Source: Saccharolobus solfataricus P2 (GTDB lineage: Archaea; Thermoproteota; Thermoprotei_A; Sulfolobales; Sulfolobaceae). From it: a DNA stretch of 64,000 nt. A program made the position numbers and the translations under genes. The notes beneath the pieces are model-generated. The model ran no database searches. It was not told where the DNA came from and saw only the letters and a program-made list of their open reading frames with translations. Below are positions 58,438-64,000 of the stretch, in pieces; position 1 is the first letter of the stretch; each line of letters opens with the position of its first letter. The DNA lies in assembly GCF_000007005.1 (NCBI RefSeq), contig NC_002754.1. The stretch is one strand, 5' to 3'.

Positions 58438-59463
58438 TCAATCCCTCCTTATCACAGCTGTCATACAATGAATCCCACCGGCACCACCAGTCAAATTTGA
58501 AACTTCAACCTCTATTACATCATACTCTTTTTCAAGCTTCCTATTTGCGGAAATTTTAGGAGAGACAATCTTACCGTCGTCTATGGTCAAAAAATTAGTT
58601 ACATACTTTTTTGCCTCATCCACACTCACTTCAATTAAATTAAATCCCTTTTCTTTAACCACGTAATCGTATAACGTAGTCTCCCTTATGATCTTCCTAT
58701 CGTAATAGACAGCAACCCTACTCTCTTCCATGAAACTCCTAACACTAACTACTGAACTAGAAGATCCAACATTGAAGAAAGTATCCAAATGAATGAACTC
58801 TTCCCTATTCCAATGAATTATACCTATCTCTCCTCCATTCAAAATATTAAATAACTCACTTACACCCTCTAAATCAGTTCTAACTCCAACACCTACCAGA
58901 TTGAAATCACCCATTGGAAAGAAATCTCCACCTTCAAATTTACCTCTACCTATTTCCTTATATTTTATATTTAACGCTTCCCAAAACAACTTCATAACTT
59001 CAACTTCTTTTTCTCTCTGATGTGTAGCCATCCTTCCCATTATTATTCCTTTTTCCGTAGTAATCTGTTGATCCCTCATGAAATAGAGATTGGAAAGAGG
59101 GTCAGTCAGTTTAACCTCTAAGTGTGTACCTTTATCCCTCTTCTCGTAACCAAGAATAGGTCTTAAGATCAACAACTCGACAAGGAATTCGGGATCATCA
59201 TTATTAACTCCAACTTTTTCTATCACCTTCTCCCTAAATCTATCGTCTCTTCTAATCTTGTTCACAATTGTTTGTCTTAGCCTATATATTTTAACTCCTT
59301 CCTCTTTTAACACTCTTCTAAGATTATCATGTTCTCTCCTAGCTTTACTCCAATTGAATTGCCTTTCATAAAGGAAAGATGAGGGATCTAAAAGACCCAG
59401 CATTACCTCTAAGCCAGGCTTATGCATTCCTACAGCTCTAAGCTTTCCCCACTCAGCAATCAT
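58438..59463 (-). CDS. Arginine deiminase / amidinotransferase family protein
   Basis: NLYFMRDQ, FEGGD, IHLDT, GGIHCMT catalytic motifs. Confidence 0.87.
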   Translation of the reverse strand: MIAEWGKLRAVGMHKPGLEVMLGLLDPSSFLYERQFNWSKARREHDNLRRVLKEEGVKIYRLRQTIVNKIRRDDRFREKVIEKVGVNNDDPEFLVELLILRPILGYEKRDKGTHLEVKLTDPLSNLYFMRDQQITTEKGIIMGRMATHQREKEVEVMKLFWEALNIKYKEIGRGKFEGGDFFPMGDFNLVGVGVRTDLEGVSELFNILNGGEIGIIHWNREEFIHLDTFFNVGSSSSVVSVRSFMEESRVAVYYDRKIIRETTLYDYVVKEKGFNLIEVSVDEAKKYVTNFLTIDDGKIVSPKISANRKLEKEYDVIEVEVSNLTGGAGGIHCMTAVIRRD

Positions 59464-59494: not shown

Positions 59495-59908
59495 TTAAGG
59501 AGATAAACTAAGGGTAGCATTTAATATCATTTCCAGTGCGTGCTCAGTACCTTCCATGAAGTGATCTCTATTCCAACCCTCTGTTAGTTTTAAAAGACCA
59601 GTCATAGTAACCTTCCATTCAGAAGAGATTTTCCCTTTAGAGATTTTCACCTTATTATATCCCCTTATTGGTCCGTCTAGATATTCAAAGGTTAAGGTTC
59701 TCTCATCGTCATTTATGATTATCCTAACTTTACCCGAAGAGGGAAACGCAAACCTGATTCTTCCCTCGTAAACATTCTTATCCACTTCCTTAACGTTTAA
59801 TTCCCTAACACCCTTCCAGTAGTTTGGAATTGAATTTACATCTCTGGCTATCCGCCATACTATATCCTCTGGCATATTGAAACTCTTCTCAATTACGAAC
59901 TCTATCAT
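59495..59908 (-). CDS. SRPBCC/START-domain protein
   Basis: VWRIARDVNSIPNYWKGV…FEYLDGP; ATG at 59908 preferred. Confidence 0.8.
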   Translation of the reverse strand: MIEFVIEKSFNMPEDIVWRIARDVNSIPNYWKGVRELNVKEVDKNVYEGRIRFAFPSSGKVRIIINDDERTLTFEYLDGPIRGYNKVKISKGKISSEWKVTMTGLLKLTEGWNRDHFMEGTEHALEMILNATLSLSP

Positions 59909-59949
59909 AATGATAATAATCTCGCTCAAGGATAAAAACATTTAATAAA

Positions 59950-60234
59950 GTGATAGGTGGTTACGCTCACGGATTGGAAGATCTAGGAAGAATAGTTGTA
60001 GCCCATATAATGAGTCAAGAGCCCTTAATAATTTCTAGAGATAATGGGATTAGTTGGGATAAGGTAAGTGTAAAGTTGCCAAGACCCACATTTGGTGTAA
60101 CAGCAATAGCTAAAAAGGATGAGAGAAAGGTAATTTACTCCACTACTGCAGTATACGAGGTCGATATAATAGAACAAAAGCCTATAGAGTTAGTTAAAGA
60201 GATACCAATGACGAGAAGAGTAATAAAGGTTTAA
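59950..60234 (+). pseudogene. Fragment of an Asp-box/BNR beta-propeller protein
   Basis: ISRDNGISW Asp-box; only 94 aa and no convincing start. Confidence 0.45.
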
Positions 60235-60542
60235 TCATAAGACGATGAAGCTTATGTATAAAAGGAAAAATTTAAATTCCAAAAAGCGAAATTAATAATT
60301 TAAGATAGAGATTTTACAACAAAAATTATTTTTTAAAATTTTTCTGTGAGCCATTCTTGTTTTCCATAATACCGGCTTCATAGTTCAGTTTCTCGTTAAC
60401 TATTTGCTTATATGTGAGATCTTAAAGCTATAAACTTTTTATTATATTGATTTTAGTGTAAACTCTCAATTTCCAAGAAATCTATTTCATTCAAATACTC
60501 ATATTTATTGGAGTCCTCACGTTTGTGACTATTGACCAAAAA

Positions 60543-60683
60543 ATGAGAGTAAACATGTACACGTTAGCCTCAAGTCAAGTAGTAAGGTATGCAATAATAA
60601 TAGCAGCAGCATCCCTACCATTAATCCTTGCAGCACTACATGTAACACACGCTGGAGAATCAATAGCACCAGGTACTGTTTAG
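60543..60683 (+). CDS. Unannotated 46-aa putative secreted peptide precursor
   Basis: MRVNMYTLASSQVVRYAIIIAAASLPLILAALHVTHAGESIAPGTV*; 28 of 46 codons end in A; hydrophobic core followed by a T-H-A SPase-I-type site; followed by a T-run. Below the ORF-track length cutoff. Confidence 0.65.
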   Translation: MRVNMYTLASSQVVRYAIIIAAASLPLILAALHVTHAGESIAPGTV

Positions 60684-60690
60684 ATACGTT

Positions 60691-60708
60691 AAATTCTTTT
60701 TAGAATTT
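60691..60708 (+). terminator. T-rich inverted repeat downstream of the small peptide ORF
   Basis: AAATTCT-TTTT-AGAATTT, 7 nt after TAG; includes TTCTTTTT, typical of Sulfolobus terminators. Confidence 0.45.
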
Positions 60709-60747
60709 TGAAGATACTATTTTTATGTATTCTCACTACTTATTCTG

Positions 60748-61818
60748 TTGAGTATGATAGATTCTACTGTTATACAAAAACTTACGAAATCATTGCATTA
60801 CGTTCAGAGGTTTGGTGACCATAATCACGAGTTGCTGGGTGAGTTAACTGGGTTAGAAAACGTTAGGAATGTCTTATCTAATCTTAAAGTATTGGTTATT
60901 CCGTCTCCCAAACTTGATTCTCTAGGATTATCGCTCTTTCATACTACTATTAAGTTGACAAGGAATTCTAAGGTCCAACCTTTAGATTTCTATTACCTAC
61001 TTGATGGCATGGTGGTTGCGTCATTGAGGGATGTTTTGACTAGTGATACTATAGTTTTGGATGTTGTGTTTCCTAGGGGTAGGTGGGATTTTGTTCAAAT
61101 TTTAGAGATGATGAGTAGGGGGGGATTAATTGATAATTATAAGACTTACTTGGAGTATAGGAGGGAGGTTTATCCAGTTGATTATTCAACTTTTAATTTC
61201 GATACTTTGACTTTTGAAAGGGTTATACTGGATAAGCCTAGGGAACCTTTCCAATTGCCGGATCTTACTGACGATTTTAAGCCGGACTGGATTGACGTTT
61301 ATACACTTGGAAAGAAACAAGAGAATCCTTTAAGGTCGTGGGATGAGATAGCAGAATCTATAGGTTTAACATCAGATGAAGTAGTAGATCATTATTTTAA
61401 TCACGTTGTTGGTAAGGGTTTGGTGGATGCGTTTTACACTTATTTAGGTAAGACTGACTTTAGAATGTCGTTGATCGTAAACGATACTAATGAGGAGATT
61501 ACTAGGGAGTTGAGTAGGATTGTTACACTTCTAAGAATATCTTATTTACATAACGATAAAATATACGCATTTATTGTTGGGCAAAGACATACATTGATAG
61601 ATATCATGGAGTTCATTAATAAACTATCCTCAGCATACCATTTTTCATATGAAATTTACGTCCATCCAATTACGCCTTTAAGGGATTTCGTTAGAACGTA
61701 TTCAATACCTTACGAACACTTCACAAAGGACAATAAGTGGTCAATTACGCTTAAAGAGTTAAAGGAGAACTTTGAGAAGGAATTGAGTAGAGTATTAGAA
61801 GAAAGGAAAAACACCTAA
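60748..61818 (+). CDS. Tandem Lrp/AsnC-like (wHTH + ligand-domain) x2 transcriptional regulator
   Basis: Second HTH PLRSWDEIAESIGLTSDEVVDHYFNHVVGKGLV; degenerate first HTH followed by an Lrp-like 'P…DSLGL' linker; TTG start ~25 nt after TTTTAT. Confidence 0.6.
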   Translation: MSMIDSTVIQKLTKSLHYVQRFGDHNHELLGELTGLENVRNVLSNLKVLVIPSPKLDSLGLSLFHTTIKLTRNSKVQPLDFYYLLDGMVVASLRDVLTSDTIVLDVVFPRGRWDFVQILEMMSRGGLIDNYKTYLEYRREVYPVDYSTFNFDTLTFERVILDKPREPFQLPDLTDDFKPDWIDVYTLGKKQENPLRSWDEIAESIGLTSDEVVDHYFNHVVGKGLVDAFYTYLGKTDFRMSLIVNDTNEEITRELSRIVTLLRISYLHNDKIYAFIVGQRHTLIDIMEFINKLSSAYHFSYEIYVHPITPLRDFVRTYSIPYEHFTKDNKWSITLKELKENFEKELSRVLEERKNT

Positions 61819-61958: not shown

Positions 61959-63335
61959 ATGACTGATCTGCAATCTCTTTACGATAAGTTCAGATACCCT
62001 TACGTGGAGGTTAGGAGACATATCGTATCGACGTTTGGGATGTCTTTTCTTAATGGCAGATTAATGGGATCGTTTAGGTTTACAGATGATGGCTATTCAG
62101 TTAGGTATTACAAGGATGGCGTGTTATATTTTGCTTCATCAAATAATCCCAATGATCTACTGAGCAGCAACAAGGAGTATAAGATAGAGGGGTGGGAGAG
62201 CGGTTTAGATAATACTGAACCTAAGGAGGGTAGTTATGAGGTTAAAGAGGGTAAACCTTTTGATCTCATGTCAGTTGACGAGAAGATAAGCTTCTTCAAG
62301 AACCTATACGAGGCTGTAAAGGACTTCCGTTCAGTCAAAAGCGTTTCATTTTTCTATGACGAAAGTATTGAGGAGAAGGAGATTATTGTCAATGGTTCAC
62401 GTATAGTTGGAAGGGTTCCTAGGCTTTACGTAGGAATGAACTTAGTCCTTAACGAGAACAATAGGACGGCTACTGCGTTTTACGAACTTGGAGGAAGTGG
62501 TGGGCTGGAAGTATTAGAGAGGATGAATTTGAATGAGGTCGTAGTGGACAAGGTTAGATCTGTTACTGAGGTCTTGGCTAAGGGTAAGAGCTTTGGTGAG
62601 CGGACTACTGATGTAGTTTTGAGTAATATGTTAACAGGTATAATGGCTCATGAATCTGTTGGGCATCCATTTGAGGCCGATAGAGTTTTGGGTAGGGAAT
62701 TCGCCCAGGCTGGTTTGAGTTATCTAGCCGAATTGAAGGATAATAGGATAGGTAGCGATGTCGTTACTGTTATAGATGATCCTACAATACCGAACAGTGG
62801 CGGTTATTACACAACAGACGATGAGGGTGTTGAAGCTAGACCTAAATACTTAATTAAGGATGGTAAGGTTAACGAATATTTACAAAATAGGTTTAGTAGT
62901 AGTAAATTTAACGTTAAGAGTAATGGCTCGGCCAGGGCTGCGAATTTCGATAGGGAACCTTTAATTAGGATGTCTAATACTTTCTTTAAACCTGGTAACA
63001 TGACCTTTGATGAGCTTTTGGAAGACGTCAAGGAAGGCGTTTATATAAAGAGTTACATGGAGTGGAATATTGATGATATGAGACTAGGTCAACGATATGT
63101 TGGGTTGGAAGCTTATGAGATTAAGAACGGAAAGATTGGTGATCCAGTGCTATTCCCGGTTTTTCAAGGGAAGACTACTGAATTGTTAAAGGCAGTTGAT
63201 GCAGTTGACAATACTTTAGTATTTTATCCGGGTACTTGTGGCAAGGGTGATCCGGATCAAGGTATACCCGTTTGGCTAGGTGGGCCTAATATGAGATTGA
63301 GAAATGTTAGGATTAAGGTGATGGGAAATGAATGA
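61959..63335 (+). CDS. tldD: TldD-family metalloprotease
   Basis: AHESVGHPFEADR (HExxxH), DDEGV, RMSNTFF, CGKG. Confidence 0.93.
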   Translation: MTDLQSLYDKFRYPYVEVRRHIVSTFGMSFLNGRLMGSFRFTDDGYSVRYYKDGVLYFASSNNPNDLLSSNKEYKIEGWESGLDNTEPKEGSYEVKEGKPFDLMSVDEKISFFKNLYEAVKDFRSVKSVSFFYDESIEEKEIIVNGSRIVGRVPRLYVGMNLVLNENNRTATAFYELGGSGGLEVLERMNLNEVVVDKVRSVTEVLAKGKSFGERTTDVVLSNMLTGIMAHESVGHPFEADRVLGREFAQAGLSYLAELKDNRIGSDVVTVIDDPTIPNSGGYYTTDDEGVEARPKYLIKDGKVNEYLQNRFSSSKFNVKSNGSARAANFDREPLIRMSNTFFKPGNMTFDELLEDVKEGVYIKSYMEWNIDDMRLGQRYVGLEAYEIKNGKIGDPVLFPVFQGKTTELLKAVDAVDNTLVFYPGTCGKGDPDQGIPVWLGGPNMRLRNVRIKVMGNE

Positions 63336-64000
63336 GGAAATGGTAAAATACGTGCAAGAAGTAAAGGGAGAAGAAGTAGGACTATTGAGAGTGAAGACAA
63401 GGAGGATAATCATTAAGCTAGTTGAGAGTAAGGTAGCTACAATACAGAGAATGACTAACAGCTACTATTTCCTAGCGTTAAAGAAGGATAGCCAGGGGTT
63501 CTTGGGTAGGATAAACAATTTAAATGAAAAACCTAAACTAACTCCAGTAGACTTCTTCCCTATTATGAGTAAAAATGAGCGGGAATACAAAATGGTTAAG
63601 AATAACACTAACATTTTATCACTATTTGACGATTTATCACCTCTTTTATCTCTCATACAGTCGGAATATCCCCTTTACGGTATTATATCAATAGATGATG
63701 TGGAAAGATCCTTGGTTACATCTAAGGGATTCAACGGAACGGAAAGCAATCTGAGCATAAGCGGTTACTTTAGGGCTAAGAATAAAGAACATAGCGGACA
63801 GTGGGCTTTCTCGTCAACTAGCTTCTCCTCCTCTCAAGTTAAGGATAGTATAAAGAAGGCTAATGAGTTGGCATCGATTACTGGCAAATACGAGATTACC
63901 GAAGGTAAATATGATGTAATCCTCTCTCCTTTAGTAATGGGTAATTTAATGGAGAGTGTTGCGAGGATGGCTTCTGGATATGCGATAATGTCTGGTATGT
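63328..64000 (+). CDS. tldE: TldE/PmbA-family subunit (partial, runs off window end)
   Basis: Open frame from ATG 63328 overlapping the tldD stop: …SGYFRAK…SGQWA…EGKYDVILSPLVMGNL…. Confidence 0.85.
   Translation, partial: MNEEMVKYVQEVKGEEVGLLRVKTRRIIIKLVESKVATIQRMTNSYYFLALKKDSQGFLGRINNLNEKPKLTPVDFFPIMSKNEREYKMVKNNTNILSLFDDLSPLLSLIQSEYPLYGIISIDDVERSLVTSKGFNGTESNLSISGYFRAKNKEHSGQWAFSSTSFSSSQVKDSIKKANELASITGKYEITEGKYDVILSPLVMGNLMESVARMASGYAIMSGM

What the first reader, a model, noticed from the sequence alone, without database searches (positions are those of the whole stretch)
60543..60683. Hidden 46-aa precursor predicted to release a 9-mer peptide (GESIAPGTV): candidate archaeal peptide signal
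Seen: an unannotated ORF in a 500-bp gap, less AT-rich than its flanks, with strong third-position-A codon bias and a T-rich terminator. It has a basic n-region, a 17-residue hydrophobic core and a T-H-A|G site fitting the SPase I (-3,-1) rule, leaving only a 9-residue tail. Known: this leader-plus-short-tail design is how Phr, PapR, NprX and SHP pheromones are encoded beside their cognate regulators in Firmicutes; I know of no established equivalent in Crenarchaeota. Inference: a peptide-mediated quorum or kin signalling cassette in Sulfolobales.
Basis: partly seen in the sequence, partly recalled or inferred. Interest (0 to 1): 0.9.

Follow-up and report, generated by a model that had tools for sequence, protein, structure and literature searches.

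The report
Archaeal mini-gene with hypervariable peptide tail
The 46-codon ORF is a real gene found only in Sulfolobales, always beside one partner gene, encoding a signal-peptide-like membrane mini-protein whose 9-11-residue outer tail changes far faster than the rest; this fits an archaeal peptide signal, but secretion and sensing are untested.

Summary
ORF 60543-60683 (+) exists, is GC-richer than its flanks, and uses A-ending codons. It has its own TATA box and T-tract, and reads as n-region, hydrophobic core, H-x-x-H-A, then a 9-residue tail. ORF length alone is not significant; conservation is the evidence.

A homologous 39-48-aa ORF (as trimmed; most 45-47) lies 61-120 nt upstream of 15 intact Sulfolobales homologues of the 60754 gene (Saccharolobus, Sulfolobus, Acidianus, Metallosphaera). 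It is not hidden: RefSeq already lists it as a hypothetical protein.

The leader is conserved and the tail is hypervariable. There are 37 tails on 27 leaders, and up to six tails on one identical leader. In one pair the leader and both flanks differ at 1 of 248 nt while the tail is replaced.

The partner is not a proven regulator. It is a tandem Lrp/AsnC-like (HTH+RAM)x2 protein whose best structural match is the enzyme NirDL. It is acidic and has no TPR. I found no tail-partner co-variation.

Best reading (about 0.33): a precursor cut by signal peptidase, releasing a strain-variable peptide cue sensed through the partner. Nearly as likely (0.30): an uncleaved membrane microprotein working with the partner. 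No publication on this module was found.

The parts
60503..60508 (+). TATA-like box (ATTTAT; GTTTAT in the homologues) of the small gene, 40 nt upstream of the ATG. It implies a 5' UTR of roughly 10 nt.
   Evidence: It is the first conserved block in the 8-species DNA alignment; sequence further upstream is not conserved. The position matches archaeal promoter geometry (established knowledge).
60543..60653 (+). Leader (residues 1-37): cytoplasmic n-region M[KR]..L.S.Q..R (1-15), hydrophobic core (17-32), H-x-x-H-A (33-37).
   Evidence: Purifying selection: pN/pS 0.27-0.49. Differences in 8 sister pairs: 20 of 283 sites.
60654..60680 (+). Hypervariable tail (residues 38-46, GESIAPGTV), family pattern [GE]-x-S-x-x-P-x-T-x, 9-11 residues.
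   Evidence: 37 distinct tails among 41 sequences. Differences in sister pairs: 28 of 74 sites, Fisher p = 5e-10. The tail is replaced while the flanks are almost identical in L018 vs L019.
60681..60683 (+). Stop codon TAG.
   Evidence: The stop position is conserved, giving tails of 9-11 residues in all 41 sequences.
60691..60708 (+). Inverted repeat AAATTCT-TTTT-AGAATTT containing the T-tract TTCTTTTT; likely the archaeal terminator of the small gene.
   Evidence: the TTTT columns are invariant; hairpin in the fold. The bacterial-type terminator scan found nothing, which does not bear on archaeal termination.
60720..60727 (+). TATA box (TTTTTATG) of the partner gene, about 27 nt before ATG 60754, so probably a leaderless mRNA.
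   Evidence: The 70-nt spacer is 90-96% identical in four Saccharolobus species.
60754..61818 (+). Partner gene, 354 aa from ATG 60754 (ORF listing gives TTG 60748, 356 aa). Tandem (HTH+RAM)x2 Lrp/AsnC-like protein with hallmark motifs H-Y-[FY]-x-H-V and S-I-P-Y-E-H-F.
   Evidence: AlphaFold2 model: pLDDT 81, pTM 0.83. Foldseek: NirDL 4ch7, E = 1.4e-9, with Lrp/AsnC regulators matching each half. Weak HMM hit to ST1022. Homologues are 347-369 aa.

Best explanation
The ORF encodes a 46-aa precursor. Together with the adjacent tandem Lrp/AsnC-fold protein it forms a two-gene module specific to Sulfolobales.

Proposed working:
1. The small gene is transcribed from its own promoter and terminated at its own T-tract.
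2. The product inserts into the membrane N-in/C-out through its basic n-region and 16-17-residue hydrophobic core.
3. Signal peptidase I cuts after the conserved H-A (or H-G).
4. This releases a 9-11-residue peptide ([GE]-x-S-x-x-P-x-T-x) outside the cell.
5. This tail is the only fast-diversifying part of the locus and acts as a strain- or lineage-variable extracellular cue.
6. After uptake it is sensed by the RAM (ligand-binding) domains of the partner, which changes gene expression.

Shown here: the gene is real and under purifying selection. The pairing with the partner is conserved across genera. It has its own promoter and terminator. Its n/h/c architecture is compatible with a signal peptide. 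Hypervariability is confined to the tail. The partner has a tandem HTH+RAM fold.

Inferred and untested: translation level, cleavage, release, uptake, binding to the partner, and DNA binding by the partner.
For: - Conserved pairing. A small ORF of 42-47 aa lies 61-120 nt upstream of the partner in the window and in L001-L004, L006, L008-L012, L014-L019 and L023. The surrounding genes differ from locus to locus.
- Coding. The sense frame is the only frame open in 8 of 8 orthologues, and the leader has pN/pS 0.27-0.49. No RNA family or conserved RNA structure was found.
- Own promoter and terminator are conserved.
- Cleavage-site geometry. Position -1 is A in 39 and G in 2 of 41. Position -3 is T/V/I/G/A in 36 of 41. 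Position +1 is G or E.
- Tail diversification. 37 tails on 27 leaders, with up to 6 tails on one identical leader. In sister pairs the tail differs at 38% of sites and the leader at 7%, p = 5e-10.
- L018 vs L019. Upstream 1/61 nt, leader 0/111, spacer 0/76 and partner 10/1071 nt differ, yet the tail is GESKAPCTG in one and GPSDPRVPGTG in the other.
- The tail is still constrained. Its length is 9-11 residues and Ser at +3 is present in 37 of 41.
- Two complete cassettes with different tails occur in one genome, Acidianus sp. HS-5. S. shibatae B12 carries a second small-protein gene (J5U23_02336) besides J5U23_01864; the partner beside that second copy was not examined.
- The partner has two RAM-type ligand-binding domains.
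- The module meets 3 of the 5 RRNPP signature criteria of PMC10075063: peptide size, receptor size and adjacency.
Against: - No tail-partner co-variation was found. The columns that separate the tail classes are no more numerous than for random splits of the taxa. The same partner patch occurs with different tails.
- The leader is as conserved as the partner protein, and its cytoplasmic N-terminus is the most constrained part (pN/pS 0.19). His at -2 is present in 36 of 41, and a second His a few residues upstream is also conserved. A disposable signal peptide does not predict this.
- The hydrophobic stretch (16-21 residues) is also long enough for a stable transmembrane helix.
- The four sequences of the Acidianus-type group have F at -3.
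- The partner is acidic and its HTH helices are poor in K/R. Its best structural match is an enzyme.
- pS in the small ORF is far below that of the partner (0.16-0.27 against 0.64). The tail's pN/pS above 1 therefore does not by itself prove positive selection.
- Several tails contain acid-labile Asp-Pro bonds, in organisms that live in hot acid.
Confidence: 0.33

Rival explanations
1. Uncleaved single-span membrane microprotein (signal anchor, N-in/C-out). The conserved cytoplasmic N-terminus and transmembrane helix are the functional parts. They would tether or modulate the soluble tandem-Lrp partner at the membrane, or join another membrane complex. The short outer tail is simply the least constrained, surface-exposed part, possibly under diversifying pressure from outside.
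For: - The leader is conserved like a folded protein: 7% differences in sister pairs, and the N-terminal 15 residues have pN/pS 0.19.
- The core AASLPLILAALH is almost invariant even where the partner is only about 50% identical.
- His residues at the outer end of the helix are conserved.
- The hydrophobic stretch is long enough for a transmembrane helix.
- The tail does not co-vary with the partner.
- The pairing with the partner is conserved.
Against: - The H-A|[GE] junction obeys the (-3,-1) rule in 36 of 41 sequences.
- Tail length and Ser+3 / Pro+6 / Thr+8 are kept while other tail positions switch among a few alternatives. This looks like a functional peptide rather than a neutral stub.
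- Replacement of the tail alone between otherwise near-identical loci needs selection or targeted recombination.
- Distant partner homologues show no fusion to a transmembrane segment.
Confidence: 0.3
2. A conflict or addiction-type module. The small hydrophobic peptide is a membrane-active toxin or effector (type-I-toxin-like, holin-like or bacteriocin-like), and the partner is its regulator or antidote.
For: - The cassette sits in many different, often variable, neighbourhoods: Cmr genes, Csa3, PIN/VapB, AAA ATPases, PaREP1 and a transposase.
- It occurs in several copies per genome, and decayed or chimeric copies exist.
- Short mosaic gene-conversion patches are present.
Against: - No hit in PADLOC or PHROGs.
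- Not found on viral contigs, plasmids or phages.
- The two genes have separate promoters with the putative 'toxin' first.
- A hypervariable tail on a conserved helix is not typical of pore-forming toxins.
- In the window the context is housekeeping: ADI and TldD/E.
Confidence: 0.1
3. Enzyme-substrate or cofactor module. The partner is an enzyme with a NirDL-like fold, or a leader-binding protein. It would act on or with the small protein, either as a RiPP-like precursor with a conserved leader and a variable core, or as a His-containing metal- or haem-binding membrane peptide.
For: - Best structural match is the siroheme decarboxylase NirDL, E = 1.4e-9, TM-score 0.53-0.60.
- The partner has many invariant polar residues: H215, Y216, H219, H306, E323, H324, D175, D180, D183.
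- Its HTH helices are acidic.
- A conserved leader with a variable core is the RiPP pattern.
- The peptide carries conserved His residues.
Against: - Only 12-13% identity to NirDL, with no Pfam or NCBIfam enzyme hit.
- No haem or RiPP tailoring, export or immunity genes are linked consistently.
- The second His of the peptide is not invariant and its spacing varies.
- Adjacency to TldD/E is confined to three close species.
Confidence: 0.1
4. Not a protein: the conserved block is regulatory DNA (for example operators for the partner) or a small RNA, and the ORF is incidental.
For: - Synonymous sites are unusually conserved: pS 0.16-0.27 against 0.64 in the partner. Third codon positions are 70-91% identical, and the 70-nt spacer is 90-96% identical.
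- ORF length alone is not significant.
Against: - The ORF, its length (39-48 aa as trimmed, most 45-47), its start and its stop are kept across genera even where the nucleotide sequence has diverged.
- It is the only frame open in 8 of 8 orthologues.
- Amino-acid replacements are conservative.
- No Rfam match. There is no consensus structure (-1.8 kcal/mol) and the fold z-score is +0.86.
Confidence: 0.03

Closest known systems
RRNPP-type propeptide-receptor cassettes of Bacillota and their phages (Rap-Phr, PlcR-PapR, NprR-NprX, AimR-AimP)
   Same: A small ORF (46 aa) with an n/h/c signal-like leader and a short C-terminal piece. It lies directly beside a 250-500-aa cytoplasmic protein with HTH and ligand-binding domains, across a 70-nt intergenic gap. 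The peptide part is variable and several cassettes can occur per genome (criteria from PMC10075063).
   Different: The receptor has no TPR domain: it is a tandem Lrp/AsnC HTH+RAM fold. The organisms are archaea. The peptide gene is upstream with its own terminator. The leader is unusually conserved. No peptide-receptor co-variation was seen. Secretion and cleavage are not shown.
Lrp/AsnC (feast/famine) regulators, e.g. ST1022 of S. tokodaii, LysM
   Same: Each half of the partner has the HTH plus beta-alpha-beta-beta-alpha-beta RAM architecture. Foldseek probabilities are about 1.0 for 2efn, 2cyy, 2p5v and 2dbb. The profile aligns to ST1022 residues 2-70. Distant family members hit HTH_AsnC-type and HTH_24.
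   Different: Two units are fused in one chain, each followed by an aromatic extension (PxDYSxFxF and IPYEHF). The window protein has no Pfam hit. The protein is acidic and its recognition helices are poor in K/R. Neither ligand nor DNA binding is known.
Siroheme decarboxylase NirDL / AhbAB (PDB 4ch7, 4czc)
   Same: Best whole-chain structural match, and the same fused tandem Lrp-like architecture.
   Different: 12-13% identity, no family-level sequence hit, patchy accessory distribution with paralogues, and no linked haem-pathway genes.
Pherotype-polymorphic peptide loci of bacteria (comC, agrD, comX, phr); comparison from general knowledge
   Same: A conserved leader with a sharply delimited hypervariable mature-peptide segment between near-identical flanks.
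   Different: In those systems the receptor or processing gene co-varies with the peptide. Here it does not detectably do so.

Membership tests
RRNPP peptide quorum-sensing cassette (signature of PMC10075063) | Small propeptide (10-100 aa; validated examples 21-50 aa) | tested here: met
   46 aa here; 39-48 aa across the family as trimmed.
RRNPP peptide quorum-sensing cassette (signature of PMC10075063) | Propeptide secreted by Sec/SPase I (SignalP-positive) | tested here: inconclusive
   No SignalP was available. By hand: the n/h/c layout is present, -1 is A or G in 41 of 41, and -3 is small or aliphatic in 36 of 41. However, the hydrophobic region is long enough for a signal anchor.
RRNPP peptide quorum-sensing cassette (signature of PMC10075063) | Receptor of 250-500 aa directly adjacent to the propeptide gene (-50 to 191 bp) | tested here: met
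   Partner of 347-369 aa, with a gap of 61-120 nt in the 10 loci where it was measured and the same upstream position in the others.
RRNPP peptide quorum-sensing cassette (signature of PMC10075063) | Receptor carries peptide-binding TPR repeats | tested here: not met
   No TPR in Pfam or NCBIfam. The model is HTH+RAM twice.
RRNPP peptide quorum-sensing cassette (signature of PMC10075063) | Peptide and receptor co-diversify | tested here: inconclusive
   Column scan: 1-2 separating columns, against a mean of 2.1 for random splits. Partners 98.9% identical carry unrelated tails. There are too few independent pairs to decide.
Signal peptidase I substrate | Basic n-region, hydrophobic h-region, small residues at -1 and -3, no Pro at -1 or +1 | tested here: met
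   Exceptions are F at -3 in 4 sequences and P at -3 in 1. Actual cleavage cannot be tested with these tools.
Class III (prepilin-type, PibD) signal peptide | [KR]-[GAS] cleavage motif immediately before the hydrophobic stretch | tested here: not met
   The residues after the conserved R or K are Y, T, M, I or L, never G, A or S.
Lrp/AsnC (FFRP) family | N-terminal HTH followed by a RAM (beta-alpha-beta-beta-alpha-beta) domain | tested here: met
   Present twice in the model. Foldseek matches Lrp/AsnC structures. Sequence-level membership is only weak: E = 0.04 to ST1022 and no Pfam hit for the window protein.
Lrp/AsnC (FFRP) family | Sequence-specific DNA binding and effector-dependent regulation | not testable with these tools
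   Indirect doubt only: pI 5-6, and HTH2 has 3 K/R against 8 D/E.
Siroheme decarboxylase (NirDL/AhbAB) | Family-level sequence similarity and linkage to haem or haem d1 biosynthesis genes | tested here: not met
   Fold match only, at 12-13% identity. No family HMM hit. No haem genes appear in 13 neighbourhoods.
Known anti-phage defence or toxin-antitoxin families | Match to a PADLOC or PHROGs model | tested here: not met
   no family for either protein.
Known RNA families | Rfam covariance-model match or a conserved secondary structure | tested here: not met

The most novel reading that the evidence does not exclude
This would be the first peptide-pheromone system in Archaea. A Sec-type precursor would release a 9-11-residue, pherotype-like variable peptide. 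The peptide would be sensed not by a TPR receptor but by a tandem Lrp/AsnC (RAM-domain) protein, giving Sulfolobales strain- or kin-specific cell-cell signalling.
Probability: 0.25. Interest if true: 0.9.

Novelty: new variant of a known kind. Interest (0 to 1): 0.65.

Why it matters
The two archaeal quorum-sensing papers and the two RRNPP papers whose abstracts I read describe no peptide-based cell-cell signalling in Archaea, and the RRNPP papers do not mention archaea. This module gives a concrete, genetically tractable candidate in model organisms (S. islandicus, S. solfataricus). It consists of two small genes and a set of natural tail alleles that can be synthesised and swapped.

Even if the peptide is not released, the locus is useful in two ways. 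It is a clean example of a conserved microprotein paired with an uncharacterised tandem Lrp-like family (about 140 clusters at 50% identity). It is also an example of extreme, sharply bounded hypervariability in a 27-nt segment, which points to balancing or diversifying selection, or to short-tract gene conversion, in archaeal populations.

Tried and rejected
- Rfam and RNA folding or alifold: no RNA family and no conserved structure.
- Bacterial promoter/terminator scan: not informative for archaea.
- Pfam, NCBIfam, PADLOC and PHROGs on the small protein and the partner: nothing beyond chance-level hits (ssr2422 at E = 0.036; CntK at E = 0.03).
- TldD/TldE as processing partners. Adjacency holds only in S. 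islandicus, S. solfataricus and E5-1-F and is absent in L001-L004, L006, L010-L012 and L014, so they are not part of the module.
- Virus or plasmid origin: no partner homologue in IMG/VR, PLSDB or INPHARED, and no viral structural analogue.
- Rosetta-stone fusion: the N-terminal extensions of distant partner homologues contain no transmembrane segment. A distant GC-rich homologue (L013) has no small ORF.
- Class III (pilin) signal, PGF-CTERM-type sorting signal and lipobox: the motifs are absent.
- Antisense ORF 60529-60669: its length and ends are not conserved, and that frame is open in only 5 of 8 orthologues.
- Positive selection from pN/pS alone: rejected as proof, because pS in the small ORF is abnormally low.
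- Co-variation of partner patch 47-56 with the tail. It was suggested by L018 vs L019, but L003 vs L017 and L008 vs L009 share the patch and have different tails.
- Literature by locus tag (SiL_0958/0959, YN1551_1784, J5U23_01863/4, SULI_10845, SSO0659): nothing found.
- The genome-contig scan returned only 2 loci. Most loci came from exact-protein look-ups.
Full report
**1. Observation.**
The window carries an ORF from ATG 60543 to TAG 60683 encoding MRVNMYTLASSQVVRYAIIIAAASLPLILAALHVTHAGESIAPGTV. It lies in the 513-bp gap between a 94-aa ORF (end 60234) and the next gene. GC is 41% in the ORF against 26% and 22% in the flanks. A-ending codons make up 61%, whereas the neighbouring genes have 20-29% A and about 40% T at third positions. 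A T-tract inside an 18-bp inverted repeat (60691-60708) follows the stop.

ORF length is not evidence in itself: 38% of shuffles of the gap give an ORF of at least 46 aa. The gene is also not hidden in public data. The same protein is deposited as a hypothetical protein for S. islandicus, S. solfataricus, S. shibatae, S. tengchongensis, Metallosphaera and Acidianus. By its identical proteins, the window is S. islandicus-like.

**2. It is a real gene.**
I fetched loci for homologues of the neighbouring 354-aa gene. A homologous small ORF of 42-47 aa lies 61-120 nt upstream, on the same strand, in 15 intact Sulfolobales loci. These are:
- L008, Sulfolobus sp. E5-1-F
- L009, S. solfataricus
- L010, S. 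shibatae
- L011, S. tengchongensis
- L003, S. caldissimus
- L004/L005, Sulfolobus sp. B1
- L001, a MAG
- L006
- L012 and L014, Acidianus sp. HS-5
- L002, Metallosphaera javensis
- metagenomic L015-L019 and L023

.

Partner identity falls to 31-34% while the small ORF keeps its start, length and architecture. The sense frame is the only one open in 8 of 8 ungapped orthologues. In an 8-species DNA alignment, conservation starts abruptly at a TATA-like GTTTAT 40 nt before the ATG. It then runs through the ORF, the T-tract and a second TATA (TTTTTATG) about 27 nt before the partner's ATG at 60754. The two genes are therefore separate transcription units with conserved signals. No Rfam family, no consensus RNA structure (-1.8 kcal/mol) and no unusual folding energy (z = +0.86) were found.

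**3. Anatomy of the peptide family.**
I collected 41 unique sequences (tabulated). They share this layout:
- M-[KR] at the start
- an n-region of about 15 residues with a recurring L-x-S-x-Q-x-x-R
- a 16-17-residue hydrophobic core (AASLPLILAAL is nearly invariant in Saccharolobus)
- a His, then 3-4 residues, then H-A
- a tail of 9 (35 sequences), 10 (5) or 11 (1) residues

The junction residues break down as follows:
- position -1 is A in 39 and G in 2
- position -2 is H in 36
- position -3 is T, V, I, G or A in 36, F in 4 and P in 1
- position +1 is G or E
- Ser at +3 is present in 37 of 41

There is no [KR]-[GAS] prepilin motif, no lipobox and no C-terminal sorting signal.

**4. The tail is hypervariable and the leader is not.**
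There are 27 distinct leaders but 37 distinct tails, and a single identical leader carries up to six tails. In eight phylogenetically independent sister pairs, the leader differs at 20 of 283 positions and the tail at 28 of 74 (odds ratio 8, p = 5e-10). Regional pN/pS is 0.27-0.49 for the leader, with the N-terminal 15 residues lowest at 0.19. For the tail it is 1.2-1.6.

The clearest case is L018 against L019:

| Segment | Differences |
|---|---|
| Upstream | 1 of 61 nt |
| Leader | 0 of 111 nt |
| Spacer | 0 of 76 nt |
| Partner gene | 10 of 1071 nt |
| Tail | GESKAPCTG vs GPSDPRVPGTG (many substitutions plus a 6-nt indel) |

Within the islandicus/solfataricus/shibatae clade the pattern is [GE]-E-S-[IKG]-[ALG]-P-[GVDI]-T-[VIGDEY]. 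Constant and variable positions alternate, and the same tail types recur on different leader clades.

One caveat applies. Synonymous divergence in the small ORF (pS 0.16-0.27) is much lower than in the partner (0.64), so a pN/pS above 1 is not proof of positive selection. In addition, 9 of the 10 partner differences between L018 and L019 sit in one 28-nt patch that includes synonymous changes. Short-tract gene conversion is therefore active at these loci.

**5. The partner.**
The 354-aa protein has no Pfam hit. AlphaFold2 on 17 homologues gives pLDDT 81 and pTM 0.83, with two consecutive units of three helices plus a beta-alpha-beta-beta-alpha-beta domain. Foldseek against the PDB puts the fused siroheme decarboxylase NirDL first (4ch7, E = 1.4e-9, TM-score 0.53-0.60), with Lrp/AsnC regulators matching each half. 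The profile aligns weakly to the Lrp-type ST1022 (E = 0.04).

A whole-library profile search finds 141 clusters at 50% identity. Most are 330-410 aa, plus shorter partial hits. Distant members hit HTH_AsnC-type, HTH_24 and ArsR HTH models in both halves, and they share the motifs YHYxxH and IPYE[LH]F.

The Sulfolobales proteins are acidic (pI 5.1-6.4 in 10 of 11). The second HTH has 3 K/R against 8 D/E, and many polar residues are invariant. 'Regulator' is therefore plausible by fold but not shown; an enzyme or a ligand-binding scaffold remains possible.

**6. Module and context.**
Only the pair is conserved. The neighbours differ between loci:
- ADI/SRPBCC and TldD/TldE in S. islandicus, S. 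solfataricus and E5-1-F
- Cmr genes in Acidianus
- a Holliday-junction-resolvase-like gene and Csa3 in S. shibatae
- PIN/VapB and a KaiC-like ATPase in S. caldissimus
- an archaeal ATPase in S. tengchongensis
- a transposase in S. solfataricus
- PaREP1 in Acidianus

.

Acidianus sp. HS-5 has two complete cassettes. Their partners are 87% identical and their tails are EESTSPDAA and GKSTSPDGG. Orphan partner paralogues without a small ORF sit next to Csa3 (L007; L010 4502-5560, 70% identity). A chimeric copy and a decayed copy also exist. No copy was found on viral contigs, plasmids or phages. The downstream TldD is the orthologue of Sso0660, a characterised Zn-metalloprotease (PMC3497727), but it is not consistently linked to the module.

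**7.
That test is positive. The further prediction, that tails co-vary with the neighbour, is not supported. Columns of the partner that separate tail classes (1-2) are no more frequent than for random splits of the same taxa (mean 2.1). The 47-56 patch that changes together with the tail in L018 is shared by loci with different tails.

Against the five-criterion RRNPP signature (PMC10075063), the module scores as follows:
- peptide size: met
- receptor size: met
- adjacency: met
- TPR receptor: not met
- Sec secretion: undecided, because no SignalP was available

**8. Mechanism.**
Best reading, probability about 0.33: a Sec-type precursor is cut by signal peptidase I after H-A. The released 9-11-mer is a strain-variable extracellular cue, sensed through the RAM domains of the partner. 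The shown steps are gene reality, conserved pairing, own promoter and terminator, signal-like architecture, hypervariability confined to the tail, and the HTH+RAM fold. Everything from cleavage onward is inference.

Main rival, probability 0.30: the peptide stays in the membrane. Its strongly conserved N-terminus and helix work with the partner, and the tail is merely the exposed, least constrained part. The unusual conservation of the leader and the lack of co-variation favour this rival. The conserved cleavage-type junction, the fixed tail length with invariant Ser, and the replacement of the tail alone favour release.

Minor rivals:
- a conflict or toxin-type module (0.10)
- an enzyme-substrate, RiPP-like or cofactor module (0.10)
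- non-coding conservation (0.03)

**9. Novelty.**
I found no publication on either gene by locus tag or by topic. The two archaeal quorum-sensing papers and the two RRNPP papers whose abstracts I read describe no peptide pheromones in Archaea, and the RRNPP papers do not mention archaea. The module works like a propeptide-receptor cassette but is not a member of that family. I rate it a new variant of a known kind, with moderate-to-high interest because it is directly testable in genetically tractable Sulfolobales.

Noticed in passing
window 59950-60234 (+): The 94-aa ORF (weak BNR/Asp-box hit) is the C-terminal remnant of a 265-aa gene that is intact in Sulfolobus sp. E5-1-F (L008 1682-2479). 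It covers residues 169-265 at 87% identity. The 5' two-thirds and the promoter are missing here, so it is probably a truncated pseudogene.
   Followed up: partly
window 60543-60753 and homologous loci: Synonymous sites of the small ORF are unusually conserved: pS 0.16-0.27 against 0.64 in the partner. A-ending codons are kept across species although the neighbours prefer T. The 70-nt spacer is 90-96% identical in four species. This is unexplained. Possible causes are avoidance of oligo-T terminator-like runs in a hydrophobic coding region, operator DNA, or gene conversion.
   Followed up: partly
L018 vs L019 partner codons 47-56; L017 partner codons 187-196: Short mosaic patches of about 28 nt, with clustered synonymous and non-synonymous changes, occur in otherwise near-identical partner genes. 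This suggests short-tract gene conversion between paralogous cassettes.
   Followed up: partly
L007 3001-4053; L010 4502-5560: Orphan paralogues of the partner (70-74% identity) have no upstream small ORF, and each lies next to a Csa3-type (CARF-HTH) gene.
   Followed up: partly
L021 1123-2097; L026 484-813: L021 holds a chimeric ORF in which an FAD-oxidoreductase-like N-terminus is fused to the C-terminal half (HTH2-RAM2) of a partner homologue. L026 holds a decayed partner fragment. Both indicate turnover of the family.
   Followed up: no
window 61959-63335 and 63337-64000 (+): A TldD/TldE (PmbA) pair with overlapping stop and start. TldD is the orthologue of the characterised Zn-metalloprotease Sso0660 (PMC3497727). 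TldE runs off the end of the window. The pair is adjacent to the cassette in only three close species.
   Followed up: yes
window 60529-60669 (-): An antisense 46-aa hydrophobic ORF overlaps the small gene. Its length and ends are not conserved (31-69 aa in other loci) and its frame is open in only 5 of 8 orthologues. It is most likely a by-product of composition.
   Followed up: yes
window 58438-59463 (-) and 59495-59941 (-): An arginine deiminase family gene (E = 5e-84) and a small SRPBCC/polyketide-cyclase-like gene lie upstream. The same pair is present in L008.
   Followed up: no
L012 1-1769 and 4029-4343: In Acidianus sp. HS-5 one cassette lies between type III-B Cmr genes (Cmr5, a RAMP gene, Cmr7b-like) and a gene with a filamentous-virus major capsid protein domain (MCP1_SIFV). 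This looks like a variable or defence region.
   Followed up: no
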